Shown: piece by piece, positions 10,130 through 64,000 of the stretch
Numbering within the stretch: the stretch's first letter is position 1
Layout of the letters: each line of letters opens with the position of its first letter
Virus record (IMG/VR): IMGVR_UViG_3300028275_000006
Coordinates: 148,543 to 212,542 of that record
DNA: 64,000 bases
Strand: one strand, 5' to 3'
Notes under the pieces: model-generated
Told to the model about the DNA's origin: nothing
Database searches by the model: none
Seen by the model: the letters and a program-made list of their open reading frames with translations, nothing else
Translations under genes and position numbers: made by a program

Positions 10130-10138
10130 GGAACCCTC

Positions 10139-43371: not shown

Positions 43372-43462
43372 AGTCTTATTTATGTAAACTTCTCTGTTGG
43401 GTTAGGCGTTATTATATTATAGCACTTAAAAAGGTGGATTACTATGTTGATGAGGACCAATT

Positions 43463-51063: not shown

Positions 51064-51102
51064 TAAACTATCTCACGTTTAATGTATTTACCGTAAAACG
51101 TA

Positions 51103-51309
51103 TCAGTGTTCGCTACGTGTAAGTTTTTGAATAACAGGACTGTCTTTGCCCTGTTCTGCTTTGTCCAGCTCTAAATGCTGTTGTAATGGCGGAACCATTA
51201 CAGGATCTGGGTCTTTTTCTTCGGCATCGTGGCTTTGTTTATCACTAGAGTTATCGTCTAGTGCATCAATTATATCTGCTAGTGATCTTAGGAATTCTGC
51301 GGCTCTCAT
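51103..51309 (-). CDS. small acidic protein starting MRAAEFL; likely start 51309
   Basis: TAAATA 5 nt upstream of ATG 51309. Confidence 0.65.
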   Translation of the reverse strand: MRAAEFLRSLADIIDALDDNSSDKQSHDAEEKDPDPVMVPPLQQHLELDKAEQGKDSPVIQKLTRSEH

Positions 51310-51317
51310 ACAATTAT

Positions 51318-51959
51318 TTAGTTCCACGCAACCATTTTAAATCTTTCTTCAGGAATGCCGAAATATTCGCATTTCCAGCGACTCTGTGCAAAGAAATCCA
51401 AGTGATGCCAAGAATTTTTATGTGCTAGTATCTGCTTACCAGCATCTTCCCAATCTATAGCCAACAACACAGGTTCTATAGTTTCACGTACAGATTCAAT
51501 TTCCGCATAGTCAAAACTATCCCATTCCCAGTGTAGGACTTCAAGTGCGTTGCCCTGTTGATCTACATAGTCCATGCTAAAATCTAATCCCCATTTGGGT
51601 CTTAGAGCTATAACTTTATGTATTAAGGGTAAACTTTTTGCCCAGTACTGTAGTTCTTCTAAGGCGGCTCCTGCGTAACCTTTACGTTCGAATAATAGAC
51701 TGTGATTTAATACACTGCCTTCTATTGTATGTTCCTGAGTAAACCACGGCTGTTTAAGTGCTGTGCGATGTTCCCTATGCTTCTTTGGTTTGGTCCAATT
51801 ACTGTAGGCATAGTGCTTTTCGAGATCAGTTAGGTCATAACCGTTCTGATCAAATAATGCAACATCCTCTACTGTTGGGATATAAACTATCTTTTCTACA
51901 GGTTTATCCCAATAACCGTTGGCGTCAAATTTGTTATCAGTTAGAGCTACGTTGGACAT
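51318..51959 (-). CDS. conserved hypothetical protein
   Basis: ORF track; Trp/Tyr-rich. Confidence 0.7.
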   Translation of the reverse strand: MSNVALTDNKFDANGYWDKPVEKIVYIPTVEDVALFDQNGYDLTDLEKHYAYSNWTKPKKHREHRTALKQPWFTQEHTIEGSVLNHSLLFERKGYAGAALEELQYWAKSLPLIHKVIALRPKWGLDFSMDYVDQQGNALEVLHWEWDSFDYAEIESVRETIEPVLLAIDWEDAGKQILAHKNSWHHLDFFAQSRWKCEYFGIPEERFKMVAWN

Positions 51960-52098
51960 TTTTATCTAAACAATCCGAACAACCACATTCGTTGCAATCG
52001 CAGCCGTCAGTCATACAACTGAATCCGCAATGTGCGGTGCACCAGCACTGACATTTAGGTTTTAATCTTTGATAAGTCGTGTCGTTGTTTTCGCTCAT
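51937..52098 (-). CDS. 53-aa Cys-rich, metallothionein-like protein
   Basis: CQCWCTAHCGFSCMTDGCDCNECGCSDC: 10 Cys and 1 His; SD GAGGA. Confidence 0.6.
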   Translation of the reverse strand: MSENNDTTYQRLKPKCQCWCTAHCGFSCMTDGCDCNECGCSDCLDKNVQRSSN

Positions 52099-52100
52099 AA

Positions 52101-53723
52101 TTAATCCTCGCTCCATACTAATCCTGCAATACAAGGACTAATACTGTTTGTGCTTTTAACAGCAATACTTAACCAACTACCTGGCGGAACTGTGATACGA
52201 TAAGCACTTAGGTCAATGTTAATAGTTCCGTTAATACCACAAAAGCCTGTATATATAGGAGTATCTATAGTGTTATCAAATGTTCCTGTGACTGTACTAC
52301 GAACTTCGTTGCAACGAGTAATAGCATAGTATTCGTGTGTTCCTGAAAAACTACTTGGTTCAAAGTATAAGTAAACTTCCACAGGGTCTGTGCTCTGTAC
52401 TGACAGGCTCATGCTTTTGACAATGGCTTCTTTGGCATTGATGATATAGTTGCCGTTGTTAGCACCTGCTAATCCGTTAGTGACTACAGCATTTTTAATA
52501 GTCATTATATGATGTATGATATCTTTTGCTAGGCCTGTTTTGCTTGTTGAATAAGAGCGTGTGAGTTCGTTTAGGTGAATTGTACCTTCGACAGCGGCAT
52601 AGATACTAGCACCATATACACTTATGTCTGTGGTATTAGTTGTGTTAACAGCGTTGTAGGTAATCTTAAAACTTGGATTAGCAGTATGAGGAGTAGTATG
52701 TTGATTAACATAGTGTTCGCGATGTACATAGATCATTGTTCCCGAATCTTGATCTTCTATAGCATAACTGATTACACCTGCGCCTAACCAGCGCATAGCA
52801 ATTTGGTAGACATTAAGTTTAGTATGATCTAAAGTCATACCACTAGGATTAGAGTCAATGGAATTGCTGCCATCTAGTTTGTCAATGTTCCAATCTTCTT
52901 GATAGGTCCAGTTATCTGTTTGTGCCAACCCTGCTTGTCTTACAGTAAATGTAGCAGTAGCATTGCCTGTACTGCTAAAACTAAATGTGCCATTCATCGG
53001 GCCTAGACTAGGTGCCAACCACATCATAGCGCCATCTGTTTGTTGCATCAACCAACCACCATATCCACCTACACGGTTAACAATTTCTGTAATTGCATGT
53101 GCGGCTGTGCCCGATGTCAGTGCTACAGTATAGGCCGTTCCGTTAAGAGTGATAGTAGCAGTCTGCCCAGCGTTGGGTGCCGTGTTTATAATTAATGTTA
53201 AGATTGTGGCCTTACCGCCTGTGCTTCGAACAACTCCAAAACGATTGCCATTCCAGCCAAAGCCCACACGATTTTCTTGATTGGCTAAACCAGCAAACTG
53301 ACTACTGCCTGCAACGCCCGTAGTAAAACCTGCGGTCATACGACTTATAATGCCCTGTCCTGGACGATAGCGAACAAAACGTTTGCTACGCAATACACCA
53401 TAACCACCTGCTGTGGTTCCTGAGTGTACTCTAAACATCTGATCTACTGAACCGGCACTAGATCCTGTACCGTTTGTGTATGTTTGTATAACATCTGCTG
53501 TGGCGCCATATATACCATCTAATTGTATAACAGCAGTAGGAGTGATTGCTAATGGTTCGCCAAAAGCAGATACCTGACCGGCAACACTAGGCCCTGACAA
53601 TTTAGCCGCTACACGAATCATTGGCTTACCAGCCAAGTCGTACTCCATGGCCTTGTGTAGGTTTAGAAGGTTTGGTTCGTCCGAGTGGACGTAGTCTGTC
53701 GAGTTAGGATTTCTTACACCCAT
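52101..53723 (-). CDS. virion structural protein
   Basis: AFGEPL, SKRFVRYRPGQG, DWNIDKLDG beta-rich pattern recalled from T4-like virion proteins. Confidence 0.6.
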   Translation of the reverse strand: MGVRNPNSTDYVHSDEPNLLNLHKAMEYDLAGKPMIRVAAKLSGPSVAGQVSAFGEPLAITPTAVIQLDGIYGATADVIQTYTNGTGSSAGSVDQMFRVHSGTTAGGYGVLRSKRFVRYRPGQGIISRMTAGFTTGVAGSSQFAGLANQENRVGFGWNGNRFGVVRSTGGKATILTLIINTAPNAGQTATITLNGTAYTVALTSGTAAHAITEIVNRVGGYGGWLMQQTDGAMMWLAPSLGPMNGTFSFSSTGNATATFTVRQAGLAQTDNWTYQEDWNIDKLDGSNSIDSNPSGMTLDHTKLNVYQIAMRWLGAGVISYAIEDQDSGTMIYVHREHYVNQHTTPHTANPSFKITYNAVNTTNTTDISVYGASIYAAVEGTIHLNELTRSYSTSKTGLAKDIIHHIMTIKNAVVTNGLAGANNGNYIINAKEAIVKSMSLSVQSTDPVEVYLYFEPSSFSGTHEYYAITRCNEVRSTVTGTFDNTIDTPIYTGFCGINGTINIDLSAYRITVPPGSWLSIAVKSTNSISPCIAGLVWSED

Positions 53724-53746
53724 AGAATAACTCCGTTATTTAGAAA

Positions 53747-54037
53747 TTAATCTAGGTCTAAAATACTTGTATAACTTTGTGTTGCTGTGTAAATTGCAAC
53801 CTTATTTCCAGATTTGAAGTTAAAAATCATTTGTGCATTTGCAGGGATTACAAATTTTGTAACGCTTGCGGTTGGATTAGTCCCAAATTCAATATAAGTC
53901 GGTTGGGCTCCTGTTGTGATTAAAATTCTTCTTGCTGTAATTGCTGTGCTTTGTACACTGGCATTATTAGTGCTCACAGTTTGATATCGATTAGTATCAA
54001 CACCGTCCAGCGTTTGTATTGTATAATATTGACTCAT
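53747..54037 (-). CDS. small beta-rich protein, probably structural
   Basis: SD AAGGA; late promoter upstream. Confidence 0.6.
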   Translation of the reverse strand: MSQYYTIQTLDGVDTNRYQTVSTNNASVQSTAITARRILITTGAQPTYIEFGTNPTASVTKFVIPANAQMIFNFKSGNKVAIYTATQSYTSILDLD

Positions 54038-54120
54038 TTGTATTTCCTTTGATATTTAAAATCTGTTTGATTAGAATACTGATTTCTAATCAGGATTCCA
54101 TAATATTTGTAACTGTAATA

Positions 54121-54136
54121 TATTTATCGTTAAATA
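54121..54136. promoter_or_regulatory. back-to-back late promoters
   Basis: TAAATA on minus (54121-54126) and on plus (54131-54136). Confidence 0.55.
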
Positions 54137-54142
54137 TTGCTT

Positions 54143-54751
54143 ATGAAACCTTTGTTGATGATACACGAAGTCCGTGAATGGATGTTTGATTTACCCTTAA
54201 ATGATTACATCTTGACCTTTGATGACGGATTGTACAGCCAGTATTACTACAACGATTGTTTCAAACAATTAACTACGCAGAGAATATACTACATCAGTTC
54301 AGGCATTGTTAGCAGTGGTTGTCAAAGCCTAGATTTTCCAAACTGTGTTCAAGCACATAAAAAAGCAAGATTGGGCGACTTTGAAGATTATATGACTGTG
54401 GAACAGATCAAAGAGCTCATGCAAGACCCTAATGTTATCATTGGCGCACACAGCCACAGTCACACTAGGTTAGATAACTTTACTAGTCTAGCAGAAAAAG
54501 TTGCTTATATTAATCAAGACACTGAACAGATGATACAATGGTTTGAAACAAATCTAGGATTTAAACCAACGCACTTCTGTTTCCCTTACAACGAAGATCC
54601 ACACGGACTGTACAAAGGACTAGTTAAAAAGTTTGGGATTACTGACTGCGCTGGATCCGGTCGAATACCAATCGAAATGCTTCGGCATAAGGAAGGCCAA
54701 CCTGATAGCCTCGATACTTTGCCAGCGTGGTCATTGCCTCGATACTCCTAG
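54143..54751 (+). CDS. polysaccharide deacetylase (NodB-like)
   Basis: LTFDDG, IGAHSHSH, FCFPY. Confidence 0.85.
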   Translation: MKPLLMIHEVREWMFDLPLNDYILTFDDGLYSQYYYNDCFKQLTTQRIYYISSGIVSSGCQSLDFPNCVQAHKKARLGDFEDYMTVEQIKELMQDPNVIIGAHSHSHTRLDNFTSLAEKVAYINQDTEQMIQWFETNLGFKPTHFCFPYNEDPHGLYKGLVKKFGITDCAGSGRIPIEMLRHKEGQPDSLDTLPAWSLPRYS

Positions 54752-55298
54752 CATCTGGAAACTCGTAAGTTTCTGTTGAGTATCTACTTAGGGCCTCTTT
54801 CTTAGAGTCAATATAATCACTGATGTCTACATAGGTTGTAGGTTGAAACGCAGGTGTTAGTTGATTAAATGTCCAATCTGTGCTAGACGGCACTTCAAAG
54901 AAATAAAGTTGATTAACAGTACTATCTGGTTTGGGACGACTGGCTATCATAACTGCATCTGCCAATACTCTGTGGTCGTGATTTATATCTGATATGTTAT
55001 GTGTGTAAACTACTTCAGGTTTATGTTGAATAAACAACTGTGTCAATAGATGTGCAGTATCATTAAGTTCTAAACTAAGATCTTTATTATTCCAAATCTT
55101 CCATTCTATTCCTAGTTGTTCGCAGTTGGCTTTGAGTGCAAACACTCTGTCAGCGGCAACTTGTTCAAAGTTCGGACGCTCTCCGTTACACAAGCAGAAT
55201 AGTGTAACCTTATGTCCTTCAGCCACCATCCGAGCCATAGTACCGTATGGACCATATGCTTCATCGTCTGGGTGTGCTAGGACAAACAGTATGTTCAC
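54639..55298 (-). CDS. PIG-L/LmbE family N-acetyl sugar deacetylase
   Basis: AHPDDE, HNISDINHDH, AEAF. Confidence 0.92.
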   Translation of the reverse strand: MNILFVLAHPDDEAYGPYGTMARMVAEGHKVTLFCLCNGERPNFEQVAADRVFALKANCEQLGIEWKIWNNKDLSLELNDTAHLLTQLFIQHKPEVVYTHNISDINHDHRVLADAVMIASRPKPDSTVNQLYFFEVPSSTDWTFNQLTPAFQPTTYVDISDYIDSKKEALSRYSTETYEFPDARSIEAMTTLAKYRGYQVGLPYAEAFRLVFDRIQRSQ

Positions 55299-56167
55299 AG
55301 CATGTCCTTGATAATATCATCTAAGTCATACTGTGCTACAAAACCTGTAAGATATTTTACTTTAGTTAGATCTGGGATTCTACTGACAATGTCACTGTGC
55401 GGTGTTGGCACATAGTTTATCTTAGATGTAGAGTTCGATAGTTTAATCACTCGCTCTGCTAATTCTTTGATAGTCACTACGCTGTCACTGCCTACATTAA
55501 AGATTTCTCCGTTGATGTTTTCGATCTTTAACAACAACTCAACAGCATCATTGATGTGACAGAAACTACGTACCTGCCCGCCATCGCTATAGACTGTAAG
55601 ATCCCTACCAACCTTGGCCGCATCAACAAACCTTGGCAGCACCATGCCATGCTCGCCTAACTGCCCAGGGCCTGTTACATTAAAGAATCTAACTATAGTG
55701 TAAGGGAATGTACTGGCAGATATCATAAACTCTGTCATTAACTTTGCCGCGGCATATCCCCAACGCAAATCTGTAGGAGGACCAATGTGTAGAGTGTTAT
55801 CTTCGCTGAATGGTCCGTCGCCGTAGACTTCTGATGTAGAACTAAAGATTACTTTGTTTTGATATCTTTCAAACAAAGGAATCAAACGACTCATTAGTTC
55901 AATATTGTTTCTTAATGTAGTTGTTGGATTGTTGACTATGTTAGCAACACCTACAGATCCTGCTAGAAAATATACAACATCTGTTTCTAACAGCAATTCA
56001 TCAAGTACAGCGTTGCGTATGTCTGCATGAATGAACTTAACTGGAAAGTTTGGAGCACTGGATGTTATTAAGGAATCAACAATAGTAACATCGTGTCCGT
56101 CTTTGATAAGACGCTTTGCTAAGTGGGCGCCAATAAAACCAGCGCCACCTAATAATAGATACTTCAT
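55295..56167 (-). CDS. NAD-dependent sugar epimerase/dehydratase
   Basis: GGAGFIG, SSTSEVYG, YAAAK, RFFNVTGP. Confidence 0.92.
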   Translation of the reverse strand: MKYLLLGGAGFIGAHLAKRLIKDGHDVTIVDSLITSSAPNFPVKFIHADIRNAVLDELLLETDVVYFLAGSVGVANIVNNPTTTLRNNIELMSRLIPLFERYQNKVIFSSTSEVYGDGPFSEDNTLHIGPPTDLRWGYAAAKLMTEFMISASTFPYTIVRFFNVTGPGQLGEHGMVLPRFVDAAKVGRDLTVYSDGGQVRSFCHINDAVELLLKIENINGEIFNVGSDSVVTIKELAERVIKLSNSTSKINYVPTPHSDIVSRIPDLTKVKYLTGFVAQYDLDDIIKDML

Positions 56168-56961
56168 AGATTAATTATAATCACTTCCCCTGCAAAATCG
56201 TCAAAATAAACATGAGGAATAGTTTTAACGAAATCAGTTTGTTCTGCTGTTAATGTTGAAAACGGAAAGAAGTATCCATTTCCATTTATATACTTTTCAG
56301 AATTCTTTGCAATCATTAATACCCCTAATTTAACATTTGGGTTTTGTAAAAATGACAGACAATCGACACAGTAAACTTTACCGTCAACTAAATGTAATTT
56401 ATCTGTAAGATCTGTTAAAAGTGGATTAATGTTATCTGTGAATGTGTTTTGTATTTTTGTCAGTAAAGTTTTATCGAGCTCGTCTATAGTGATAACATCT
56501 GTACCTACGTCCATACATTTAAAGAACTGAGGAGTTTCTAAAGTAAGCTCTGGAAAACCTGCTGGTCTATTTTTAAACAAATTAGAAAGTTGCTCAAAGT
56601 CAAATGCGTCTAAAATTTGAGAACCTACAACAGAAATATATTTTTTCTTATCATCTACACGACTATTTGGATTATCTTTTAAGAAATCTAATTCGGTAAT
56701 GTCTTCGTTTAAATTAGTTTCTAACCAACCTTTGTAGTAGTATGCGGCGCCTTCGTGTAGACAGTATTGATCCCAATAACCCCATTGCATTTCTGGATCG
56801 ACAAACGTGTCGTATTCTGCTTCTAAAGCAAGTATTGTACTAGTTCTGCGGCAACCAGACTGTCCGTCTGGATTATACTCACAAAGTCTAAAAAGGTTTT
56901 CTTTGGAATTTTCCACAGAAGACGCAGGGATAGAGACTTGTTCGTTAGTAGGTTCTGTCAT
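56164..56961 (-). CDS. hypothetical protein in the sugar-modification cluster
   Basis: ORF track, coupled junction. Confidence 0.65.
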   Translation of the reverse strand: MTEPTNEQVSIPASSVENSKENLFRLCEYNPDGQSGCRRTSTILALEAEYDTFVDPEMQWGYWDQYCLHEGAAYYYKGWLETNLNEDITELDFLKDNPNSRVDDKKKYISVVGSQILDAFDFEQLSNLFKNRPAGFPELTLETPQFFKCMDVGTDVITIDELDKTLLTKIQNTFTDNINPLLTDLTDKLHLVDGKVYCVDCLSFLQNPNVKLGVLMIAKNSEKYINGNGYFFPFSTLTAEQTDFVKTIPHVYFDDFAGEVIIINL

Positions 56962-56970
56962 TTTTATTCC

Positions 56971-57618
56971 TCAATATTCTATAATATTAGCATCTAATAC
57001 AGGATAGTCAATACCCAAATGATTGACTATAGTATCAATATCTGTTCCTTGTTCGATGTATAGTGTATTTACCCTATTATCTTCATTGTAAAGATAGAGA
57101 AAGAACGGCTTGTTATCCTTGAGTTCAAAGTGCTTAAAATCTATTAATTTAATTTGATTGCCGTTTCTAGCCAAATTATAAGTCATGCTGTTGTAGAATG
57201 GAGTGAGTTCTAACTGTTTGTGTTGAAGTTTCAAATAATGAAATTCCTGCTCTGTAACTGATTCTACAGGATCTCCTTCCCAGTATTCATAGACCAAAAA
57301 ACTATCATTGCTTTCTAGTAATTTGGGTAATAGATTTCCCTGATAAGATTCTAAAAATGCAAATATGTCTACGGGCTGTTTTTGTTTTGTCAAATAGCAG
57401 TAGTAAGGATCTACTTCAGTAGTGTAAGTATCTGCATTAGAGTAAATGAATTGTAACGCTCGCCTGTGAACGTACTTTTTGTTATTGTGTTCAAAGAAGT
57501 AAAAATATATCTTACGAGTAAAAGGCGTGTGGTCTAGTCCGTAAATGCGTTTAAAGTCATCACGGGCTTCCTTTATAAATTGCACCTTACTGTTAATAAG
57601 ATATGTATTCATCCTCAC
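56971..57618 (-). CDS. hypothetical protein with kinase-like motif
   Basis: LPKLLES..FLVYEYWEG and YNLARNGNQIKLIDF. Confidence 0.45.
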   Translation of the reverse strand: MRMNTYLINSKVQFIKEARDDFKRIYGLDHTPFTRKIYFYFFEHNNKKYVHRRALQFIYSNADTYTTEVDPYYCYLTKQKQPVDIFAFLESYQGNLLPKLLESNDSFLVYEYWEGDPVESVTEQEFHYLKLQHKQLELTPFYNSMTYNLARNGNQIKLIDFKHFELKDNKPFFLYLYNEDNRVNTLYIEQGTDIDTIVNHLGIDYPVLDANIIEY

Positions 57619-58666
57619 GCACCAAGTCTAATGTTGAGCAATGAATGCCGCCTGCAAAGATTTCACCGTGCTCTAGTTTAATAGGAATGACTGTAAAACC
57701 ATTCTTATCTAATATGTCTGCAACACCAACAGCACGATCGGTAACCAACACAGTATTTTCGTCAACACTTAATACATTAACGTCCATACCACGACTGCTG
57801 GCTAGTCTAATATCAATATCTGTCATACCTCGTACATCAATGTTTGCTGTTAGGTCTTTAGGATACAAGTAAGTCCAGTTGCGGAACTTAGCAGGCAACA
57901 GATCTTTAATGTTTGGGTACAAGGGATTAACTAGGAACACTCCTGGCCGTAGACAGATTAGGCAACCATCGATATGATTATCTGCTACATGTAAGACATG
58001 GAAGTCTGTGTCTGGATAAAAGCTCTTGATCCACTCGTAGCCCAAGTATTGATTATAACTGTTGATGTTAACAACACAGTCTTTGCCTATGCGTAGGAAC
58101 TGTGCGCCATCTACTGCCATTACATAGTTACTGGGAATGTTTGCATAGTCACGACTATCTCCCCAATGCCCTAGGTCAATAGTGTCTTCTGTTAACTCAG
58201 TGTGCGGAGCCTTAATCCATTGCCCGCCACGTCCTCTATCCCATGCACGACTATACACATCATGTAACAGAGTATTTTCATAATAACGATTGCGTACAAA
58301 AGTAGGAGTTTCAATTAACTTGTTGCCATACACTAATGTTAGATCACGTACATTACTTGCCGAACTTAGTTCACTACGAAAACTAGGGGTAGTAAACGGA
58401 ACAATCTTATCTAGCACATCGGGTCTGTGTACTGTTACTCCTAGGCTTTCTAATGTCTTTGCCAACCCATCTAACTGTTCATTGCGTTGATCAATCAATT
58501 CCATGCTGACTGTATAGTTTTCAAACGGTGCTTCGTAGATGCGTTCGTCTAAGGCTTCTCTATAAAACTGTTTGAATGTAATGTCGCTGATACGCTTGGC
58601 TAGTTTTAATTCTCTGCCAACTACTACTTCTTTTAAACGGCCAAAACTTGTGTGTGAGTTAATCAC
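57593..58666 (-). CDS. L-arginine-dependent amidinotransferase (AGAT/StrB1 family)
   Basis: SFGRLKEVVVG, VRD, DGAQ, HIDG, C-terminal GGIHCSTLD. Confidence 0.9.
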   Translation of the reverse strand: MINSHTSFGRLKEVVVGRELKLAKRISDITFKQFYREALDERIYEAPFENYTVSMELIDQRNEQLDGLAKTLESLGVTVHRPDVLDKIVPFTTPSFRSELSSASNVRDLTLVYGNKLIETPTFVRNRYYENTLLHDVYSRAWDRGRGGQWIKAPHTELTEDTIDLGHWGDSRDYANIPSNYVMAVDGAQFLRIGKDCVVNINSYNQYLGYEWIKSFYPDTDFHVLHVADNHIDGCLICLRPGVFLVNPLYPNIKDLLPAKFRNWTYLYPKDLTANIDVRGMTDIDIRLASSRGMDVNVLSVDENTVLVTDRAVGVADILDKNGFTVIPIKLEHGEIFAGGIHCSTLDLVREDEYISY

Positions 58667-59507
58667 GTAACTTCCTCATTCTATTAAAATATTCTACTTT
58701 CTCTCTGACTTTGTCATACACAGGATCATGTATAAGGTGTTCGTGCCAGAAGTATACTGTTCTAAGTTCATCGTCTGTAAACTCCTTTACTGGTGTATAC
58801 CACTCGCCTATCTGATACTTTTGTATTGGCTGTACGGGCCACAGTTTGTTGTTATAGATCTTGTCCATAACGTATTCTTCTAAGTAGTAGTCTCCGCTGA
58901 CTGCACGAACTTTCTCCCATTCAGGATCATGATTAGTCATTGTGTCAGTTAGGACATCAAAGAAGAATTTATAAAATCCACTGTCACGTCTGCTGATAGT
59001 AAAGCCTGTGTCAAATGGATTACTCCATCCTTCTTTAACTGTACGCTGTTGTGCTGTACAGTAGTCATCGTACTGTCCGCAGATCAATGTTTCACTGTTA
59101 ACTAACTCTTCCGGCAAGGGCTTAATCAAATTCATGTCTAAGTCTATTTTGATTAGTACATCTTCTGCAAGCCTCTGCTCTAGCAACATACCTACTAAAG
59201 GAACATTTAAGAAACCACTGATAAATGTTTCTGTGATAGGCTGATACTCTTCTATGTAAGTTACATTTAATTCTTTAAATCGTTCTTTTGTTTTGTCAGT
59301 TACAATGTTGTGTGTGGGACAAAAAGCATAGATAGCACAGTCCTTTAACCATCCGCCATTCTTACGCCAGTTCTCAAAGCACAGTACTGCTTCGCTTTCA
59401 AACAAACGTCTAGTACCAACAATACCTTTCTGCTCGTTAAGGTTGTTAGCATCTCCTTCGATGGCTGTGATTAGGGCATACTTCATACTGCATAGTCCTT
59501 TAAACAC
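58659..59507 (-). CDS. glycosyltransferase-like protein (GT-A fold)
   Basis: IKIDLD DxD motif, FDTGF, FWHEH. Confidence 0.55.
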   Translation of the reverse strand: MFKGLCSMKYALITAIEGDANNLNEQKGIVGTRRLFESEAVLCFENWRKNGGWLKDCAIYAFCPTHNIVTDKTKERFKELNVTYIEEYQPITETFISGFLNVPLVGMLLEQRLAEDVLIKIDLDMNLIKPLPEELVNSETLICGQYDDYCTAQQRTVKEGWSNPFDTGFTISRRDSGFYKFFFDVLTDTMTNHDPEWEKVRAVSGDYYLEEYVMDKIYNNKLWPVQPIQKYQIGEWYTPVKEFTDDELRTVYFWHEHLIHDPVYDKVREKVEYFNRMRKLRD

Positions 59508-60118
59508 GCAAACTTTGAAATGTCTGGATAGTCTTTGTGTGAGCCATTAGTGTAGTGTTCGCTGAGTTGATTAAGCAACAATACACCACGTGCGGCTTCG
59601 TCTGGGCTCATGTACATATGATAACCCATAATGATACCTGTGTCCTGTGCTGTAGGAATAGCACTGTCTCTACCGTCGTGGCGCATACGTTTTAGTTTCT
59701 CATACATCTCTTTGTTGTCTAATAGAATTGCTCCGCCCTTACCTATTGCTAGACGCTTCTTCTGTTGAAAACTAACACACTGGATTTGCCCAGGCACATA
59801 CATATTCTTTTCAAAACCTACAGCATAGTCATAGACATTAGTGTGTCCAATACGATAGTTGCCCATCCAATCATCGAACTCTAACCATACATTGTATCCG
59901 TAGTTGATCAGTGTCATTGGAACACTTAGGTATGTCTGTGTTGGTATACTGACTTTCTGTTTCTTCTTACCATAGTATTCCATTGCTAACAGTATAGCAT
60001 TGGTGCAACGATCTACTGCCACAGCATAAGGAGCACCTGTGTATTCACATAGGCGTTGCTCAAATAGTTCTACAAAATCGTTGTTGTTGTGATAATCTCG
60101 TTTAATGTCTTTAGACAT
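59483..60118 (-). CDS. DegT/DnrJ/StrS PLP sugar aminotransferase (short form)
   Basis: FEQRLCEYTGAPYAVAVDRCT, YDYA, SFQQKKRL..GKGGAI, GYHMYM. Confidence 0.85.
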   Translation of the reverse strand: MSKDIKRDYHNNNDFVELFEQRLCEYTGAPYAVAVDRCTNAILLAMEYYGKKKQKVSIPTQTYLSVPMTLINYGYNVWLEFDDWMGNYRIGHTNVYDYAVGFEKNMYVPGQIQCVSFQQKKRLAIGKGGAILLDNKEMYEKLKRMRHDGRDSAIPTAQDTGIIMGYHMYMSPDEAARGVLLLNQLSEHYTNGSHKDYPDISKFACLKDYAV

Positions 60119-61038
60119 ACTGTATCCTTTTTTAACTCGTCTAGCAAAGTGACTATGTTAGTTATCATAGGCACTGGCTTCCATTCAATTTTCTTAATCA
60201 AAGTGTTGCTAGTATCTTGCAGTTGTTCGTAGTCGTAGAATAATTCTTCTCGTAGTTTCTCTCCAGGTCTACATCCAATTATGACCTGCGGGTAATCTTT
60301 AGGTACTAGGTCCATTATAGACTGCTCGTCGCCCATATCTAAGATGTATGTTGCTTTGGCAAATTCTAAATGAACAATATTAATGATTAACGATACTGCA
60401 TCCTGTACTGAAATAAAGTAACGCTTCATTTCAGGATCTGTAATAGTTATTGGCAAATTGTTTGCTATCTGCCACTCTAATGTTTCTACAAAGGATCCCG
60501 ATGATCTAAAAACATTTCCAAATCTAACAATTTTCATTTCTGTGTCAGATGTTCTAGCATATTGCTGTACAATACGTTCGCACCAAAGTTTAGTGTAGCC
60601 CATATTGTTAGTAGGGTTTACTGCCTTGTCGCTGGATATGTGTATCATACATTTCACTTCGTCCGAATGATTACATAAATTAATAACAGATAGAATATTG
60701 TTCTTAACTACAGAATAAAAGTTATTTTCATCTTCTAGTGTATCTACATGTTTATAGGCAGCGGCATTAAAAATATAATCTATTTGATATTTGTCAAAGA
60801 TCATGTCGACTAACTTCTTGTCGCTGACATCTCCGACTATACAATGCACGTTCTTAGCACCAATGCCGCGCTGTAGTTTATAGATAGCGTATTCGCTGAT
60901 ATCAACTGCTATAATAGTTTTTGCCTGTATCTGATTTACCAATTCACTGCCAATAGTTCCGCCAGCGCCAGTTATTAAAACTGTGCTGTCTAAAAAATTT
61001 TGCAAATCGTCTATGTTTAGTTTGTTTTTTATTTCCAA
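60070..61038 (-). CDS. CapD/PglF-type UDP-sugar 4,6-dehydratase
   Basis: TGAGGTIGSEL, NAAAYKHV, SSDKAVNP, VRFGNV, RPGEKLREEL. Confidence 0.92.
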   Translation of the reverse strand: MEIKNKLNIDDLQNFLDSTVLITGAGGTIGSELVNQIQAKTIIAVDISEYAIYKLQRGIGAKNVHCIVGDVSDKKLVDMIFDKYQIDYIFNAAAYKHVDTLEDENNFYSVVKNNILSVINLCNHSDEVKCMIHISSDKAVNPTNNMGYTKLWCERIVQQYARTSDTEMKIVRFGNVFRSSGSFVETLEWQIANNLPITITDPEMKRYFISVQDAVSLIINIVHLEFAKATYILDMGDEQSIMDLVPKDYPQVIIGCRPGEKLREELFYDYEQLQDTSNTLIKKIEWKPVPMITNIVTLLDELKKDTVCLKTLNEIITTTTIL

Positions 61039-62555
61039 TTTAGTTTCTTCGTTTTATAGTTGTTGACAAACACTTTAAAATTTTCTGTGTGTTTAATAGC
61101 AGTCTCTTCGACTAATTTTAATTTTTCTTCAAGAGTAAGCACATCGCCGTTTTCGTGACACAATATTCTTGACAATAAGTATCCTTCAGTCCTAGCAAGA
61201 TTCTTTTCTCCCACTAACCAAATTTTATCTAATTTGTTACACCAATCCCATGCTTGCATAATATCCATGTTAGGATTCTTCCAGGCTATGGGAGGATTTT
61301 TACCTGTTCCAGGTAACATTACTTTTGTTCTGTCTACTGTTTTATCTTTTTCAAATATAAAATTAGGATTAGGATTAAGATCTATTTCAATCTGTTCATA
61401 TCCGTATTTTTGAAAATCATCGGAAATTCTATTTTCTCTAGAGTCTCCCCAGTCCATTATTTCTAAAGGACAAGCCACTGCTAACTGATCTCTCCAATGA
61501 TTCTTAACCCATTGGTAAGTAGTTTCTAAACTGTCTAATGTTTCGTGTGGCAGGCCTGCTATCAAACTGATAGTTGCCCTGTACTTGTTACCTACGTGCT
61601 TTTGAAAGTATTCTTTAACTTCTACTAGTCCTTCTTTCATTCGTGTAGTGTTACCATTTTTTCCTATGTAACTTGCTGATTTAGGGTTAAATGTTTCTAT
61701 GCCATAGAAATGTCCAAGGAACCCCATTCTTAATAAATCTTCTCTATCGTGCTTACGATTTATTAATAAATCAGCACGGATGAATCCAGCAAAGTATGGC
61801 TTCCACGGTAACGTTTCAACTAAGTCTGCTATTCTAGAAATCTTATAGGGCCTGTCATTGAATGTTTCGTCGCTAATATGATAGTTCTCTATACCAAAAC
61901 GATCATAGGCATCCATGAATTGTTCTCTTACGTTTTTAATATCTCTAGTATAATCTTCTTTGGCACCGATCACAGGAAAATTACAGAACTTACAGGCAAA
62001 CTTACAACCTCGACTGAATTCTATTCTGCCCCATTCGTTAGGCATTAAAAAGTCTCTATCCTCATATTTGATCATAGCATGTTTCATAGGATATGCAGGA
62101 TAGTCTCTATTGGCATTTATAATCTTAGTTCTGCTAGAAATATTTTCAAACTTTGGACTTTGGCCATTTGAAAATTTATAGTTAAGTAACTCTTCTATAG
62201 CATACTCGCCATAGCCATAAATGTGATAGTCCGAATATGAATAATCAATAAGTTGCGATTGCCCGCCTGATATAAAAACTATGTCTGGATAGTTCTTTTT
62301 TATCCATTCAAAGGCTAGACGAAATTTATGTATAGACTGCGCTCTGTTCCAAAGATAAGAAAATCCTATAAACTTTGTATTTGATGTAACTCTAGATTTT
62401 ACAAGTTCTAACAGTTCTTCCGGAGTCCAATACATTATAAAGTCCACAACTTCGCAGTCCCAATTCAAGGAACGAAGGTGATTAGCCATTCTGTGTATGC
62501 CGCCAACTCTATCAATTAGCACAACATTCACAGCCAAAAGTAAACAATGATTCAT
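61029..62555 (-). CDS. B12-binding-type radical SAM enzyme
   Basis: N-terminal cobalamin-binding-like region; SRGCKFACKFC, DETF, GIET, IAGLPHET. Confidence 0.85.
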   Translation of the reverse strand: MNHCLLLAVNVVLIDRVGGIHRMANHLRSLNWDCEVVDFIMYWTPEELLELVKSRVTSNTKFIGFSYLWNRAQSIHKFRLAFEWIKKNYPDIVFISGGQSQLIDYSYSDYHIYGYGEYAIEELLNYKFSNGQSPKFENISSRTKIINANRDYPAYPMKHAMIKYEDRDFLMPNEWGRIEFSRGCKFACKFCNFPVIGAKEDYTRDIKNVREQFMDAYDRFGIENYHISDETFNDRPYKISRIADLVETLPWKPYFAGFIRADLLINRKHDREDLLRMGFLGHFYGIETFNPKSASYIGKNGNTTRMKEGLVEVKEYFQKHVGNKYRATISLIAGLPHETLDSLETTYQWVKNHWRDQLAVACPLEIMDWGDSRENRISDDFQKYGYEQIEIDLNPNPNFIFEKDKTVDRTKVMLPGTGKNPPIAWKNPNMDIMQAWDWCNKLDKIWLVGEKNLARTEGYLLSRILCHENGDVLTLEEKLKLVEETAIKHTENFKVFVNNYKTKKLNWK

Positions 62556-63463
62556 ATAATGTAACGTAAGTCTTTTTTATCGCAGAGTTCTATAACTGCA
62601 CGGTCGCAGTATTTACAGACTTCGTACTGCATGTTCAAAATTTTCTCGTAGTCGCCGTCCCATTCTTTGCCTTTGCTGGCTTCCAAAAACAAATAGCAGG
62701 GATATACTTTGCCGTCAATGTCCACTTGCTGGCTTTTGTTTTCCCAACTCATGCAGTAGGCTTTGCCTTTAACTGGACTAGCATATTTGGCACGGGCAAA
62801 CTTATCCATCTGCTGATAGTCATCTATTTTTTTAGGATTGGGTCTTAATTTAAGTAGGTTCGTTTTGTCTACGTAATTGGATTCTTCTTTCTGCAGGAAT
62901 GTTTCTGTCCAATAGACATGACTAAACTCGCTGACCATTTGTTTGAACTCTAGCCCATCAAAGTCATCGCTGTTATAATAAAAACGAATACACTGAGCAT
63001 AGTCATTCTTATTATCACTACGGAACGCACGAGCATTCTCTAGTATTTTTGCTAGACTAGTTCCTGTACGATATATTTCGTGTAGTTCTTGTGTGCTACC
63101 ACAAATGCTGAAATAAACTTTGTCATCTGCGTTCATTAGAGTAGATAACTCTTTCCACCAGTCGGGCTTGTGTGTTGCTCCGTTAGTACAGATTTCAATC
63201 TTTAGTCCACGGGCCTTCATGTATTTGACTAAAGGAAAGAAGTCTTTGTAGATAGTTGGTTCCGATATAGTACCAACAAGACGTATCCATTCTAAGTCTG
63301 GAAACGTTTCTAATTGATCTATGACTTCCTGTAGTGGACGAACTTTATTCTCTGGGTAGTGTTCTTTGAATGCTGTATAGTTTCTATAGCATAGTCCACA
63401 CTGAGCATTACAGTATGTTGTAAGTTCTAACTCTAGGTCAATAACCTTAGGCATCTTTAACAT
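62552..63463 (-). CDS. radical SAM/SPASM protein
   Basis: CNAQCGLC, GTISEP, TNG, C-terminal C..PC..CKYC. Confidence 0.88.
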   Translation of the reverse strand: MLKMPKVIDLELELTTYCNAQCGLCYRNYTAFKEHYPENKVRPLQEVIDQLETFPDLEWIRLVGTISEPTIYKDFFPLVKYMKARGLKIEICTNGATHKPDWWKELSTLMNADDKVYFSICGSTQELHEIYRTGTSLAKILENARAFRSDNKNDYAQCIRFYYNSDDFDGLEFKQMVSEFSHVYWTETFLQKEESNYVDKTNLLKLRPNPKKIDDYQQMDKFARAKYASPVKGKAYCMSWENKSQQVDIDGKVYPCYLFLEASKGKEWDGDYEKILNMQYEVCKYCDRAVIELCDKKDLRYII

Positions 63464-64000
63464 ACAAAGTCCAATCCCATTTTATCAATAAAGGTACGTG
63501 TACGCTTCTCACATAGGAAACAATCTGGAAACTTAAAGGATAGGATATCACTGTAGTCCATGTCTTCTTTGTCTGCTGGAAAGTAGTCTTGCTCATTCTC
63601 AGCATGAGTATAACAGGCACTGACCTGTCCCCATTGGTTAATGTATATTTTCTTTTGTTGTAGACTACGGCATTGTATGTTGTATTGTTTACCGTCGTTG
63701 GGCTCAGGACGATTCTTAAACAACAACTTAATAGTTTGCTCCCGGGTCTTAACAGGACGAATGCCTAGTTCTACTTCTTTGTTGTAGACGTTTACTCTAC
63801 GCACACCTTCTGTTTCAACTTTCATTACATTACTGAATTGATCAAAGATTGCTTTCATCTCTGGGCTTTCTCTATCCTCTGCATTGTACTCAAAACGGAT
63901 ATGTTGTATCCAATCATTCTTACGTCTGTTCTTACGGAACGCCGCGGCATTGTCTAGGATCTGTTGTAGGTCACTGCCCACACGATACTTGGCATGTATT
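63457..64000 (-). CDS. radical SAM/SPASM paralog, 3' part only
   Basis: Frame open to window end; aligns with 62552..63463; C-terminal C..ACY..CFLC. Confidence 0.75.
   Translation of the reverse strand, partial: IHAKYRVGSDLQQILDNAAAFRKNRRKNDWIQHIRFEYNAEDRESPEMKAIFDQFSNVMKVETEGVRRVNVYNKEVELGIRPVKTREQTIKLLFKNRPEPNDGKQYNIQCRSLQQKKIYINQWGQVSACYTHAENEQDYFPADKEDMDYSDILSFKFPDCFLCEKRTRTFIDKMGLDFVC

What the first reader, a model, noticed from the sequence alone, without database searches (positions are those of the whole stretch)
54143..64000. Sugar-modification cluster with an amidinotransferase: possible guanidino-sugar pathway
Seen: one coupled minus-strand run of radical SAM x3 (one B12-type), CapD/PglF dehydratase, DegT aminotransferase, GT-like protein, amidinotransferase, kinase-like protein, unknown, epimerase, PIG-L deacetylase, plus a convergent NodB deacetylase, next to the tail fibre block. 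Known: 4,6-dehydratase plus DegT gives 4-amino-4,6-dideoxy sugars; StrB1-type amidinotransferases convert amines to guanidines in streptidine synthesis. Inferred: the phage makes an amidinated, possibly methylated amino sugar for virion protein glycosylation, DNA modification or host surface remodelling. The target is not visible from sequence.
Basis: partly seen in the sequence, partly recalled or inferred. Interest (0 to 1): 0.8.

Follow-up and report, generated by a model that had tools for sequence, protein, structure and literature searches.

The report
Phage guanidino-sugar and radical-SAM fibre island
A large aquatic T4-like phage carries, beside its tail-fibre genes, a conserved enzyme set that most likely builds an unusual guanidino amino sugar and attaches it to something, probably a fibre protein; the same gene island also sits in the chromosomes of predatory bacteria.

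Summary
The gene run is real. Two labels need correcting. The "DegT" is a conserved 211-aa mini-version. The "epimerase" is a UDP-glucuronate-decarboxylase (UXS/ArnA)-type SDR.

The window holds only the 3' half of an island of about 28 genes. The island continues past base 64000 with eight more radical-SAM genes (11 in all), two GT-B-like genes and a small Cys-rich fibre protein with a Peptidase_S74 chaperone.

The amidinotransferase is a true StrB1/AGAT homologue with an invariant Asp-His-Cys triad. In 52 distinct viral loci it lies within 5 kb of a PLP enzyme in 46, and of a radical-SAM or 2OG/cupin oxidase in all 52. This supports an oxidise, transaminate, amidinate logic. The PglF-type dehydratase and the B12 radical-SAM gene are optional accessories. 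The UXS-like SDR, mini-DegT, GT-A, PIG-L and NodB genes are the conserved sugar core.

The whole island occurs in synteny in Peredibacter and Halobacteriovorax chromosomes, outside any prophage and next to S74 fibres.

Best reading: cytoplasmic synthesis of a guanidinylated amino sugar, transferred to a fibre protein. The product and the target are inferred, not shown. Function is uncharacterised in the literature.

The parts
63457..64000 (-). 3' part of a radical-SAM (twitch/SPASM-type) gene; the gene start lies beyond the window end
   Evidence: phrog_21308 radical-SAM hit. The full-length 324-aa gene with a CxxxCxxC motif is seen in the identical contig L006:4236-5210.
62552..63463 (-). Radical-SAM enzyme with a C-terminal Cys-rich (SPASM-like) region
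   Evidence: Pfam Radical_SAM E=1e-13, SPASM E=0.006. CxxxCxxC at residue 18. No NCBIfam family reaches its cutoff.
61029..62555 (-). Class-B (B12-type)-like radical-SAM enzyme, a putative C-methyltransferase; an accessory gene of the island
   Evidence: Pfam Radical_SAM E=5e-13. Sub-threshold NCBIfam hits to B12-binding/radical-SAM families (TIGR04072, TIGR04013, PhpK, BzaD). Absent from L007, L008 and L010.
60070..61038 (-). Soluble PglF/CapD-type UDP-GlcNAc 4,6-dehydratase; an accessory gene of the island
   Evidence: Polysacc_synt_2 E=1e-72. PDB PglF (WlaL, 5bjw) E=2e-47. The SSDK...M...K motif has Met in place of the SDR Tyr. Absent from L007, L008, L010 and the bacterial loci.
59483..60118 (-). 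Mini-DegT: a 211-aa PLP sugar-aminotransferase-like protein that lacks the C-terminal domain and a core segment of about 43 aa
   Evidence: Pfam DegT E=2e-21. PLP Lys121 and Asp97 are invariant in 17 sequences, one of them the full-length Peredibacter DegT. Lengths of 195-242 aa are conserved across diverged phages.
58659..59507 (-). Retaining-type GT-A-fold glycosyltransferase
   Evidence: Invariant D122-x-D124, E210/E211 and H255. AF2 pLDDT 92. Foldseek matches the UGGT (GT24) catalytic domain and GT6 enzymes at E=1e-9 to 1e-7, TM 0.5-0.66. CP220 gp088 is a homologue.
57593..58666 (-). L-arginine-type amidinotransferase of the AGAT/StrB1 family
   Evidence: PDB StrB1 6e-31, AGAT 7e-31, HsvA and SxtG similar. 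Asp186/His231/Cys343 are invariant. 418 metagenomic protein clusters at E<=1e-10. A distinct subfamily in the tree.
56971..57618 (-). Minimal protein-kinase-like protein, possibly nucleotide-binding; the catalytic Asp is replaced by Asn
   Evidence: ESM-Atlas neighbours are APH, RIO1, WaaY and Kdo kinases. AF2 pLDDT 90. All top-50 Foldseek hits are kinases, but weak (E 5e-3, TM 0.3-0.39). K48 and D160 are conserved; N143 sits at the catalytic-base position.
56164..56961 (-). Fast-evolving protein of unknown function; a distant paralogue of the kinase-like gene
   Evidence: No Pfam, NCBIfam, PHROG or Atlas match. Jackhmmer links it to the 215-aa family. Only 30-49% identical between loci whose amidinotransferases are 74-97% identical.
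55295..56167 (-).
   Evidence: Pfam Epimerase E=6e-45. Best PDB hit is human UDP-glucuronate decarboxylase, E=1e-38 (136 bits), against at most 97 bits for GalE. The sequence shows STSEVYG and YxxxK motifs.
54639..55298 (-). PIG-L family de-N-acetylase
   Evidence: Pfam PIG-L E=2e-18. BshB1/BshB2/MshB sub-threshold hits. AHPDDE metal motif at the N-terminus.
54137..54751 (+). Cytoplasmic NodB/CE4 deacetylase, convergent with PIG-L and overlapping its 3' end
   Evidence: Pfam Polysacc_deac_1 E=1e-7. TFDDG and HSHSH motifs, and no signal peptide or TM segment. Co-conserved in all related loci, and on the same strand in L010 and Peredibacter.
44668..54037 (-). Adjacent structural block: 96-aa ORF, 540-aa virion structural protein, 213-aa and 74-aa ORFs, and a 2131-aa fibre-like ORF
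   Evidence: phrog_1645 virion structural protein for 52101-53723. Patchy tblastn matches of the 2131-aa ORF to annotated tail-fibre and baseplate proteins of Pelagibacter and Synechococcus phages.

Best explanation
Window 54137-64000 is the 3' half of one long, operon-like, entirely cytoplasmic island. The island lies in the host-recognition (tail-fibre) region of a >200-kb aquatic T4-like myovirus related to pelagimyophages. It encodes a nucleotide-sugar tailoring and transfer pathway. All steps below are inferred.

(1) A UDP-4-keto sugar is made by the UXS/ArnA-type decarboxylase from a UDP-uronic acid; a short Ugd-like gene lies upstream. In this phage it can also be made by the accessory PglF-type UDP-GlcNAc 4,6-dehydratase.
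(2) The mini-DegT transaminates the ketone to an amine.
(3) The StrB1/AGAT-type amidinotransferase moves the amidino group of L-arginine onto an amine, giving a guanidino sugar. That amine is either the new C4 amine or a C2 amine freed by the PIG-L and NodB de-N-acetylases.
(4) The B12-type radical-SAM enzyme methylates, and the SPASM/twitch radical-SAM enzymes carry out further anaerobic-style redox or cross-linking chemistry.
(5) The retaining GT-A enzyme, with two GT-B-like enzymes upstream, transfers the sugars to an acceptor. The acceptor is most probably a fibre protein: either the small Cys-rich S74-chaperoned fibre encoded inside the island, or the neighbouring tail fibres.

The kinase-like protein may bind a nucleotide or phosphorylate an intermediate, as in streptidine synthesis, but it lacks the canonical catalytic Asp.

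Shown: gene identities, catalytic motifs, folds, synteny and co-occurrence. Inferred: substrates, order of steps, product and target.
For: Enzyme identities and intact catalytic motifs.

Conserved core across diverged viral islands (radical-SAM genes, mini-DegT, GT-A, amidinotransferase, UXS-like SDR, PIG-L, NodB).

In 52 distinct viral amidinotransferase loci, 46 have a PLP enzyme within 5 kb and 52 have a radical-SAM or 2OG/cupin oxidase within 5 kb.

The island continues upstream with a Cys-rich S74 fibre, GT-B-like genes and more radical-SAM genes.

The whole island is syntenic in Peredibacter and Halobacteriovorax chromosomes. There it has a full-length DegT in the mini-DegT's place, lies between respiratory and housekeeping genes, and is followed by pilin-like S74 fibres.

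A search seeded with the fibre finds 11 viral loci: 10 on contigs already known to hold island genes, and the eleventh (L190) with the same rSAM-rSAM-fibre-u205 block.

No island protein has a transmembrane segment.

Contigs from four metatranscriptome libraries cover most of 54100-60000.

The published host-recognition cluster of pelagimyophages holds tail fibres, glycosyltransferases and radical-SAM cassettes (PMC7029224).
Against: - No product, substrate or acceptor is demonstrated.
- No amidinotransferase of this family is known to me to act on a nucleotide sugar (own knowledge).
- The mini-DegT lacks part of the fold, so its activity is uncertain.
- The kinase-like protein lacks the catalytic Asp.
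- Campylobacter-phage and cyanophage clusters have the amidinotransferase without the Cys-rich fibre. The cyanophage type pairs it with a HisC-like PLP enzyme, so there the acceptor may be an amino-acid-like molecule.
- The radical-SAM genes could serve a different purpose from the sugar genes.
- RNA-library coverage may be DNA carry-over.
Confidence: 0.45

Rival explanations
1. Host-surface remodelling. The enzymes make an Ara4N- or bacillosamine-like cationic sugar that is added to host LPS or capsule during infection, to block superinfection or alter adsorption. This is what has been proposed for glycosyltransferases in pelagimyophage host-recognition clusters.
For: The gene set parallels LPS sugar pathways: Ugd, ArnA-type decarboxylase, DegT/ArnB-type aminotransferase, NodB/ArnD-type deacylase, GT-A and PglF. 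The proposal is published in PMC7029224.
Against: No flippase, polymerase, lipid-carrier transferase or any membrane protein is found in the island. No formyltransferase or ArnT-like gene was seen in it. The island is chromosomal in predatory bacteria, next to fibres. In phages it is always inside the fibre module and contains its own fibre gene.
Confidence: 0.15
2. A free small molecule. The island makes an aminoglycoside- or aminocyclitol-like guanidino compound as an antibiotic or signal. The S-SCSM2R authors proposed this when they called their homologues 'antibiotic synthesis genes'.
For: The toolkit resembles aminoglycoside pathways (own knowledge of those pathways): a StrB1-like amidinotransferase, an APH-like kinase fold, a DegT/StsC-like aminotransferase, a PIG-L deacetylase (BtrD/TunE-like), a B12 radical-SAM enzyme (GenK-like), SPASM radical-SAM enzymes (BtrN-like) and glycosyltransferases. 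The proposal is in PMC12801897.
Against: No cyclitol synthase, exporter or self-resistance gene is found in about 30 kb of island. The UXS-like and PglF-like enzymes point to UDP-sugars. The island is embedded with fibre genes in three independent contexts. This is a lytic T4-like phage.
Confidence: 0.12
3. DNA hypermodification. The sugar or guanidino group is attached to phage DNA bases to evade restriction.
For: Phages commonly glycosylate or hypermodify DNA. A kinase-like protein, a PLP enzyme, radical-SAM enzymes and a glycosyltransferase recall thymidine hypermodification toolkits (own knowledge). Related Campylobacter phages have heavily modified DNA (PMC6884629 is listed, but I did not read it).
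Against: No base hydroxymethylase, DNA transglycosylase, P-loop hmU kinase or DNA-binding domain turned up in the family searches of the island genes. The same island is in non-prophage bacterial chromosomes beside fibre genes. The GT-A model resembles glycan- or protein-directed retaining glycosyltransferases.
Confidence: 0.08
4. Protein-directed chemistry only. The radical-SAM enzymes and the amidinotransferase act directly on the Cys-rich fibre, by thioether cross-links and by converting Lys or an N-terminal amine to a guanidine. The sugar genes are then an unrelated neighbouring glycosylation cassette.
For: The fibre carries four invariant CxC hexads ending exactly at the S74 cleavage site, and two radical-SAM genes always lie immediately upstream of it. 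In cyanophage-type loci the amidinotransferase sits with P4H- and Asp/Asn-hydroxylase-like oxygenases.
Against: In every window-type locus the amidinotransferase is embedded between the GT-A, mini-DegT and kinase-like genes, not next to the fibre. The Sulfurovum contig keeps only the set radical-SAM, amidinotransferase, mini-DegT and GT-A.
Confidence: 0.15

Closest known systems
Streptidine branch of streptomycin biosynthesis (StrB1 amidinotransferase with StsC aminotransferase and a kinase)
   Same: The logic is oxidise, transaminate, (phosphorylate), then amidinate from L-arginine. The amidinotransferase matches StrB1 over its full length (E=6e-31) and has the same Asp-His-Cys triad. A DegT-family aminotransferase and a kinase-fold protein lie adjacent.
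   Different: No cyclitol synthase or inositol dehydrogenase is present. The keto-sugar enzymes are UDP-sugar types. The kinase-like protein lacks the catalytic Asp. The amidinotransferase belongs to a separate subfamily. The setting is a phage fibre module, not an antibiotic cluster.
Arn (L-Ara4N) and bacillosamine (PglF/PglE) nucleotide-sugar pathways
   Same: A Ugd-like gene, an ArnA_C/UXS-type decarboxylase, a DegT-type C4 aminotransferase, a NodB-type deacylase and a GT-A enzyme are present. A PglF-type 4,6-dehydratase is the accessory entry point.
   Different: No formyl- or acetyltransferase, no lipid-carrier or membrane steps, a truncated aminotransferase, and added amidinotransferase, PIG-L and eleven radical-SAM genes.
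Radical-SAM/amidinotransferase modules of Campylobacter phages CP220 and CPt10 (Eucampyvirinae)
   Same: The amidinotransferase is 43% (CP220) and about 30% (CPt10) identical. GT-A-like paralogues, GT-B-like u262/u298 homologues and several radical-SAM genes are shared, and the module lies next to baseplate genes. It was noted in 2010 as an interchangeable module of unknown function (PMC2853527).
   Different: The Campylobacter modules lack the UXS-like, PIG-L, NodB, PglF-like and mini-DegT genes; CPt10 instead has a short CobD-like PLP protein. They also lack the Cys-rich fibre.
Virus-encoded glycosylation of virion fibres or capsids (giant-virus fibril sugars, mycobacteriophage capsid glycosylation)
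   Same: A virus encodes its own amino-sugar pathway (4,6-dehydratase plus DegT-type aminotransferase) and glycosyltransferases next to structural genes (own knowledge of those systems).
   Different: No guanidino sugar, amidinotransferase or radical-SAM array is known to me in those systems. Virion glycosylation is not demonstrated here.
Cyanomyovirus S-SCSM2R 'antibiotic synthesis genes' (AHBA_syn-like, amidinotransferase, radical-SAM maturase)
   Same: The mini-DegT is 40% identical to ORF305, and an amidinotransferase is present at 22% identity, together with glycosyltransferases and a radical-SAM gene.
   Different: The cyanophage type uses 2OG/cupin oxygenases and a HisC-like PLP protein beside the amidinotransferase, plus a carbamoyltransferase. 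Its amidinotransferase falls in the general AGAT clade.

Membership tests
AGAT/StrB1 amidinotransferases (pentein fold) | Full-length homology to solved members | tested here: met
   StrB1 6e-31, AGAT 7e-31, HsvA 5e-30 and SxtG 8e-29, each over about 350 residues.
AGAT/StrB1 amidinotransferases (pentein fold) | Catalytic Asp-His-Cys triad | tested here: met
   D186, H231 and C343 are invariant in 8 diverse phage sequences and align to the catalytic motifs of StrB1.
AGAT/StrB1 amidinotransferases (pentein fold) | L-arginine as donor; identity of the amine acceptor | not testable with these tools
   Needs an enzyme assay.
DegT/DnrJ/EryC1/StrS sugar aminotransferases | PLP-binding Lys and ring-nitrogen Asp | tested here: met
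   K121 (in SFQQKK) and D97 are invariant in 17 sequences.
DegT/DnrJ/EryC1/StrS sugar aminotransferases | Complete two-domain fold-type-I architecture (about 360-400 aa) | tested here: not met
   Only 211 aa. Compared with the Peredibacter orthologue position, it lacks a core segment of about 43 aa and the C-terminal domain of about 80 aa. I therefore file it as a DegT-derived mini-family.
PglF/CapD UDP-GlcNAc 4,6-dehydratases | Rossmann TGxxGxxG, the (S/T)DK catalytic pair, and Met replacing the SDR Tyr | tested here: met
   TGAGGTIGS and SSDKAVNPTNNMGYTK align to the PglF sequence ISSDKAVRPTNIMGCTK; E=2e-47.
UXS/ArnA UDP-glucuronate decarboxylases | Best similarity to decarboxylases rather than 4-epimerases; STSEVYG and YxxxK motifs | tested here: met
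   hUXS1 scores 136 bits against at most 97 bits for GalE. The motifs are read from the translation. Decarboxylase activity itself was not tested.
PIG-L de-N-acetylases | Pfam domain above cutoff; AHPDDE metal motif | tested here: met
   67.5 bits against a cutoff of 28.2. The motif is in the translation.
NodB/CE4 deacetylases | Pfam domain above cutoff; TFDD and H(S/T)xxH motifs | tested here: met
   31.9 bits against a cutoff of 23.1. TFDDG and HSHSH are in the translation.
Class B (cobalamin) radical-SAM methyltransferases | CxxxCxxC plus an N-terminal cobalamin-binding domain | tested here: inconclusive
   CxxxCxxC is at residue 184. Only sub-threshold NCBIfam hits to B12/radical-SAM families, and no Pfam B12-binding hit.
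GT-A retaining glycosyltransferases (GT6/GT8/GT24-like) | GT-A fold with a DxD motif | tested here: met
   AF2 pLDDT 92. Foldseek prob 1.0, TM 0.5-0.66 to UGGT and GT6 enzymes. D122/D124 are invariant. No sequence-level family hit.
Protein-kinase-like phosphotransferases | Kinase fold with beta3 Lys, catalytic-loop Asp and DFG Asp | tested here: inconclusive
   All top-50 Foldseek hits are kinases, but at E>=5e-3 and TM<=0.39. K48 and D160 are conserved; N143 replaces the catalytic Asp.
Aminocyclitol (streptidine/2-DOS) biosynthetic clusters | Cyclitol-forming enzyme (inositol-phosphate or 2-DOI synthase) | tested here: not met
   None was found among the island genes scanned in the phage and bacterial versions.
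Thymidine/cytosine DNA hypermodification systems | Base hydroxymethylase, DNA kinase or transglycosylase in the cluster | tested here: not met
   No such domain in any island gene. The rest of the genome was not examined.

The most novel reading that the evidence does not exclude
The island is a dedicated maturation system for a trimeric, Cys-rich adhesin fibre, and it is shared by horizontal transfer between large aquatic phages and predatory Bacteriovoracia. SPASM/twitch radical-SAM enzymes would cross-link or otherwise modify the four invariant CxC hexads at the fibre tip. Three glycosyltransferases would decorate the fibre with a guanidinylated, C-methylated amino sugar made in situ. The result would be a cationic, arginine-mimicking glycan used to grip prey or host surfaces. 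This would be the first natural guanidino-sugar protein glycan and the first RiPP-like radical-SAM maturation of a virion protein.
Probability: 0.3. Interest if true: 0.9.

Novelty: new variant of a known kind. Interest (0 to 1): 0.74.

Why it matters
Virus-encoded sugar pathways are known. An amidinotransferase wired into one is not, and nor is an eleven-gene radical-SAM array placed around a fibre gene.

Amidinotransferase genes are common in aquatic viruses. More than 558 IMG/VR stretches encode an AGAT-family relative, and the window enzyme alone has 418 related metagenomic protein clusters. They have been noted in Campylobacter phages since 2010 without any function assigned.

Finding the complete island in cultivable predatory bacteria offers a genetic route to the chemistry. 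It also suggests that two very different predators share a tool for recognising prey surfaces.

If the product is a guanidino glycan on fibres, it would bear on host-range determination, on phage engineering, and on the enzymology of amidinotransferases and minimal PLP enzymes.

Tried and rejected
- Megablast of the region against GenBank phages: no match.
- Profile searches of the GT-like and kinase-like families against PDB sequences: nothing.
- The 265-aa protein gave no family, Atlas or fold lead.
- No radical-SAM gene reached an NCBIfam family cutoff, so no specific chemistry (BtrN, anSME, sactisynthase and so on) can be assigned.
- Stop-codon recoding or a frameshift as the cause of the short DegT: rejected. 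The downstream frame is a separate conserved GT-A gene, and the short length is conserved in 16 diverged sequences.
- Prophage origin of the bacterial copies: rejected for Peredibacter, where cytochrome bc1/c genes lie on one flank and FtsK, rpsB and tsf on the other.
- T4 late-promoter motif and sigma-70 and terminator scans: no enrichment and no signal inside the run.
- Literature searches for a function of these clusters, and for the PDB entries 8VR2/8VR3 that matched the SDR and the mini-DegT: nothing usable.
- One Pfam call failed because of wrong coordinates.

Full report
**1. What is in the window**

The minus strand from 64000 down to 54639 carries eleven complete ORFs and one ORF cut by the window end. 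All abut or overlap by 4-50 nt. One convergent plus-strand ORF, 54137-54751, overlaps the last minus-strand gene by 113 nt.

- two SPASM/twitch-type radical-SAM genes (63457-64000, partial; 62552-63463);
- a 508-aa radical-SAM gene with sub-threshold matches to B12-binding radical-SAM families (61029-62555);
- a Polysacc_synt_2 dehydratase (60070-61038);
- a DegT-family protein (59483-60118);
- a 282-aa protein with no family hit (58659-59507);
- a 357-aa protein with only a marginal Pfam hit (57593-58666);
- two unknowns (56971-57618 and 56164-56961);
- an extended SDR (55295-56167);
- PIG-L (54639-55298);
- NodB (54137-54751).

Downstream lie a virion structural protein and a 2131-aa ORF with patchy tail-fibre and baseplate similarity.

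Promoter and terminator scans show nothing inside the run.

**2. Refining the identities**

Amidinotransferase. It matches StrB1, AGAT, HsvA and SxtG over its whole length, E 6e-31 to 8e-29. Asp186, His231 and Cys343 are invariant across eight diverse phage homologues.

Dehydratase. It is closest to C. jejuni PglF (E=2e-47). It has PglF's (S/T)DK pair and Met in place of the SDR Tyr.

The "epimerase". It scores 136 bits against human UDP-glucuronate decarboxylase but at most 97 bits against GalE enzymes. It carries the STSEVYG and YxxxK motifs typical of UXS/ArnA (the motif significance is from my own knowledge). I therefore read it as a decarboxylase-type SDR.

The "DegT". It is 211 aa. It keeps the PLP Lys (K121) and Asp (D97), but it lacks a core segment of about 43 aa and the whole C-terminal domain. 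This is seen by comparison with the full-length DegT that occupies the equivalent position in Peredibacter. Sixteen diverged viral or MAG homologues are all 195-242 aa, so this is a conserved mini-family and not a broken gene.

The GT-like protein.
- It has an invariant DxD.
- Its AlphaFold model is confident (pLDDT 92).
- Foldseek places it with retaining GT-A enzymes, namely the UGGT catalytic domain and GT6, at E 1e-9 to 1e-7 and TM 0.5-0.66.

The 215-aa protein.
- It models confidently (pLDDT 90).
- All of its top fifty structural neighbours are protein kinases, but the matches are weak (TM <=0.39).
- ESM-Atlas neighbours are APH, RIO, WaaY and Kdo kinases.
- The beta3 Lys and the DFG-type Asp are conserved, but Asn occupies the catalytic-base position.

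The 265-aa protein. It is a fast-evolving distant paralogue of the 215-aa protein.

PIG-L and NodB. Both have their metal and catalytic motifs, and neither has a signal peptide.

**3. The phage and the true extent of the island**

The window belongs to a T4-like myovirus.
- Its CHASE2-cyclase is 46% identical to that of Methylophilales phage Melnitz and 36% identical to that of Pelagibacter phage HTVC008M.
- It carries the curli-type CsgG operon reported as a pelagimyophage feature (PMC7029224).
- IMG/VR contigs with the same genes reach 212-278 kb.
- The sequence recurs in at least 18 riverine metagenomes.

Contigs identical to the window show that the run continues beyond base 64000. Reading upstream from the window end:
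- radical-SAM genes e, d, c and b;
- an SDR-like 210-aa gene;
- radical-SAM gene a and one more radical-SAM gene;
- two paralogous ~260-300-aa genes whose Atlas neighbours are GT-B (GT4) glycosyltransferases;
- a 205-aa unknown;
- a 272-aa fibre protein with a Peptidase_S74 chaperone;
- two more radical-SAM genes;
- a short Ugd-like gene.

In total the island has eleven radical-SAM genes with CxxxCxxC motifs. No predicted membrane segment occurs in any island protein.

This is the "host recognition cluster", with tail fibres, glycosyltransferases and radical-SAM cassettes, described in general terms for pelagimyophages.

**4. Conservation**

In diverged viral islands (amidinotransferase identity 38-87%), the following genes are retained:
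- the radical-SAM genes;
- the mini-DegT;
- the GT-A gene;
- the amidinotransferase;
- the UXS-like SDR;
- PIG-L and NodB, in most of them.

The PglF-like and B12 radical-SAM genes are present in only some islands. The kinase-like pair is missing in L010.

A profile scan found more than 558 viral stretches that encode an AGAT-family protein. Among the best 80 loci, 52 hold distinct amidinotransferases with enough flanking sequence. Within 5 kb of the amidinotransferase:
- 46 have a PLP enzyme, either the mini-DegT or a ~300-aa HisC-like protein (the HisC assignment rests on a weak profile match at E=5e-3 with the D...SK...R.G motifs);
- all 52 have a radical-SAM or a 2OG/cupin oxygenase.

The sugar-specific genes (GT-A 11 loci, UXS-like 10, PIG-L 6, NodB 6) mark the window's own sublineage.

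In the tree, the amidinotransferases of the window-type viral islands, the predatory bacteria, a Sulfurovum MAG, CP220 and CPt10 all fall on one side of a 100/100-supported long branch. On the other side are the actinomycete, cyanobacterial and cyanophage-type enzymes.

**5. The bacterial copies**

The closest cellular amidinotransferases are in:
- Peredibacter sp. HCB2-198 (60% identity);
- two Halobacteriovorax genomes (58-59%);
- a Sulfurovum MAG (52%).

The three Bacteriovoracia loci carry the whole island in the same order:
- two radical-SAM genes;
- the Cys-rich protein;
- the 205-aa gene;
- two GT-B-like genes;
- five radical-SAM genes;
- the amidinotransferase;
- the GT-A gene;
- the kinase-like gene;
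- a full-length DegT;
- PIG-L, the UXS-like SDR and NodB (their order and strands differ between the two genera);
- a fibre protein with a pilin-like N-terminus and a Peptidase_S74 C-terminus. In Peredibacter one more radical-SAM gene and a 123-aa ORF precede this fibre, and Halobacteriovorax also has a radical-SAM-like ORF within the PIG-L/NodB/SDR group.

In Peredibacter the island lies between cytochrome bc1/c genes and FtsK, rpsB and tsf, so it is not a prophage.

In Halobacteriovorax the Cys-rich protein ends exactly where S74 autocleavage would cut the phage version. That point is immediately after four invariant CxC hexads.

A search seeded only with the mature fibre sequence recovers 11 viral loci. 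Ten are on contigs already recovered through the amidinotransferase or an island radical-SAM gene. The eleventh has the same block of two radical-SAM genes, the fibre and the 205-aa gene.

**6. Mechanism proposed**

Shown: identities, motifs, folds, synteny and co-occurrence.

Inferred:
1. A UDP-4-keto sugar arises from a UDP-uronic acid through the UXS/ArnA-type SDR, and in this phage also from UDP-GlcNAc through the PglF-type dehydratase.
2. The mini-DegT makes the amine.
3. The amidinotransferase converts an amine to a guanidine using arginine. The amine is either the C4 amine or a C2 amine exposed by PIG-L or NodB.
4. The B12-type radical-SAM enzyme methylates, and the other radical-SAM enzymes act on the sugar or on the fibre.
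5. GT-A and GT-B enzymes transfer the sugars.

The most likely acceptor is a fibre protein, for these reasons:
- all components are soluble;
- no lipid-carrier, export or DNA-directed function is present;
- the island is tied to fibre genes in marine phages, in Campylobacter phages (next to baseplate genes) and in predatory bacteria.

I put this combined reading at 0.45. The chemistry (a guanidino sugar) is somewhat more likely than the target assignment.

**7. Rivals**

- Host LPS remodelling, the published suggestion for pelagimyophage glycosyltransferases. It fits the enzyme types, but not the absence of membrane steps or the bacterial context.
- An aminoglycoside-like free metabolite. This is suggested by the striking toolkit resemblance and by the "antibiotic synthesis" label in the S-SCSM2R paper. 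It lacks a cyclitol synthase, an exporter and a resistance gene.
- DNA hypermodification. It lacks any DNA-directed component and is hard to reconcile with the chromosomal bacterial copies.
- A purely protein-directed role for the amidinotransferase and radical-SAM enzymes. This remains possible and shades into the novel case.

**8. Expression**

Contigs from four riverine metatranscriptome libraries cover most of 54100-60000 at about 100% identity and low depth. This is compatible with transcription, but DNA carry-over is not excluded.

**9. Comparison with the literature**

- The Campylobacter-phage radical-SAM/amidinotransferase module was described in 2010 as an interchangeable block of unknown, probably metabolic, function (PMC2853527). 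It is still only listed in recent genome papers.
- The cyanophage S-SCSM2R paper lists homologues as antibiotic genes. It also detected a different amidinotransferase copy in the virion proteome.
- I found no paper that assigns a product or a target, or that notes the Bacteriovoracia copies.

**10. Verdict**

- This is a new variant of virus-encoded sugar tailoring and glycosylation. It has an unusual amidinotransferase step and an unexplained radical-SAM and fibre component.
- Interest: 0.74.

Noticed in passing
L013:6096-6914 (same phage, beyond window end); also L099:2084-2683, L100:2384-2935: A small fibre protein. Its N-terminus is Cys-rich (MACSG...C...C...C). Four invariant CxC hexads (DCICNSDCxCNxVCxCHNDCGCNY) end exactly at the Peptidase_S74 autocleavage site. 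Two radical-SAM genes always lie just upstream of it. In Halobacteriovorax the protein stops at that exact point.
   Followed up: partly
L099-L101, L179, L180 (Peredibacter sp. HCB2-198, Halobacteriovorax spp.): The complete island of about 20 genes is syntenic in the chromosomes of predatory Bacteriovoracia. It is flanked by housekeeping genes and followed by fibres with a pilin-like N-terminus and an S74 C-terminus. The direction of transfer between phages and these bacteria is unresolved.
   Followed up: partly
window 6633-12366: A curli-type secretion operon in a phage: CsgG with an SH3 domain (11197-12366), curlin-repeat proteins (6633-9026 and 10139-11113) and a FecR-domain protein (9023-10129). 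This matches the pelagimyophage feature reported in PMC7029224.
   Followed up: partly
window 3890-5941: A CHASE2 sensor fused to an adenylate/guanylate cyclase domain, 46% identical to a Methylophilales phage Melnitz protein.
   Followed up: no
window 18445-20310: A phage-encoded DnaK/Hsp70, up to about 69% identical to DnaK sequences in the phage collection. Several of those records look like bacterial contamination.
   Followed up: no
window 54639-54751: The convergent NodB and PIG-L genes overlap by 113 nt at their 3' ends. The overlap is conserved in L009, whereas NodB is co-directional in L010 and in Peredibacter.
   Followed up: no
L029-L098 (cyanophage-like viral contigs): A different, very common amidinotransferase neighbourhood. 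It consists of a ~175-aa cupin/2OG-like protein, a ~300-aa HisC-like PLP protein and the amidinotransferase. Around these lie P4H- and PhyH-type 2OG oxygenases, a B12 radical-SAM gene, a mini-DegT, a NodU/CmcH-type carbamoyltransferase and SGNH-like proteins.
   Followed up: partly
L013:2979-3716 and homologues in L024-L028, L040: A consistently short (240-265 aa) UDP-glucose-dehydrogenase-like protein that lacks the N-terminal part and the C-terminal domain. It often lies next to the UXS-like SDR. Full-length versions occur in L046 and in Halobacteriovorax.
   Followed up: no
window 41959-44634: A peptidoglycan-binding cell-wall hydrolase (41959-43371) and a non-specific DNA/RNA endonuclease (43825-44634) lie directly beside the 2131-aa fibre-like ORF.
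   Followed up: no
window 54100-60000: The sequence is present in at least 18 riverine DNA metagenomes. Contigs from four metatranscriptome libraries contain it at about 100% identity.
   Followed up: partly
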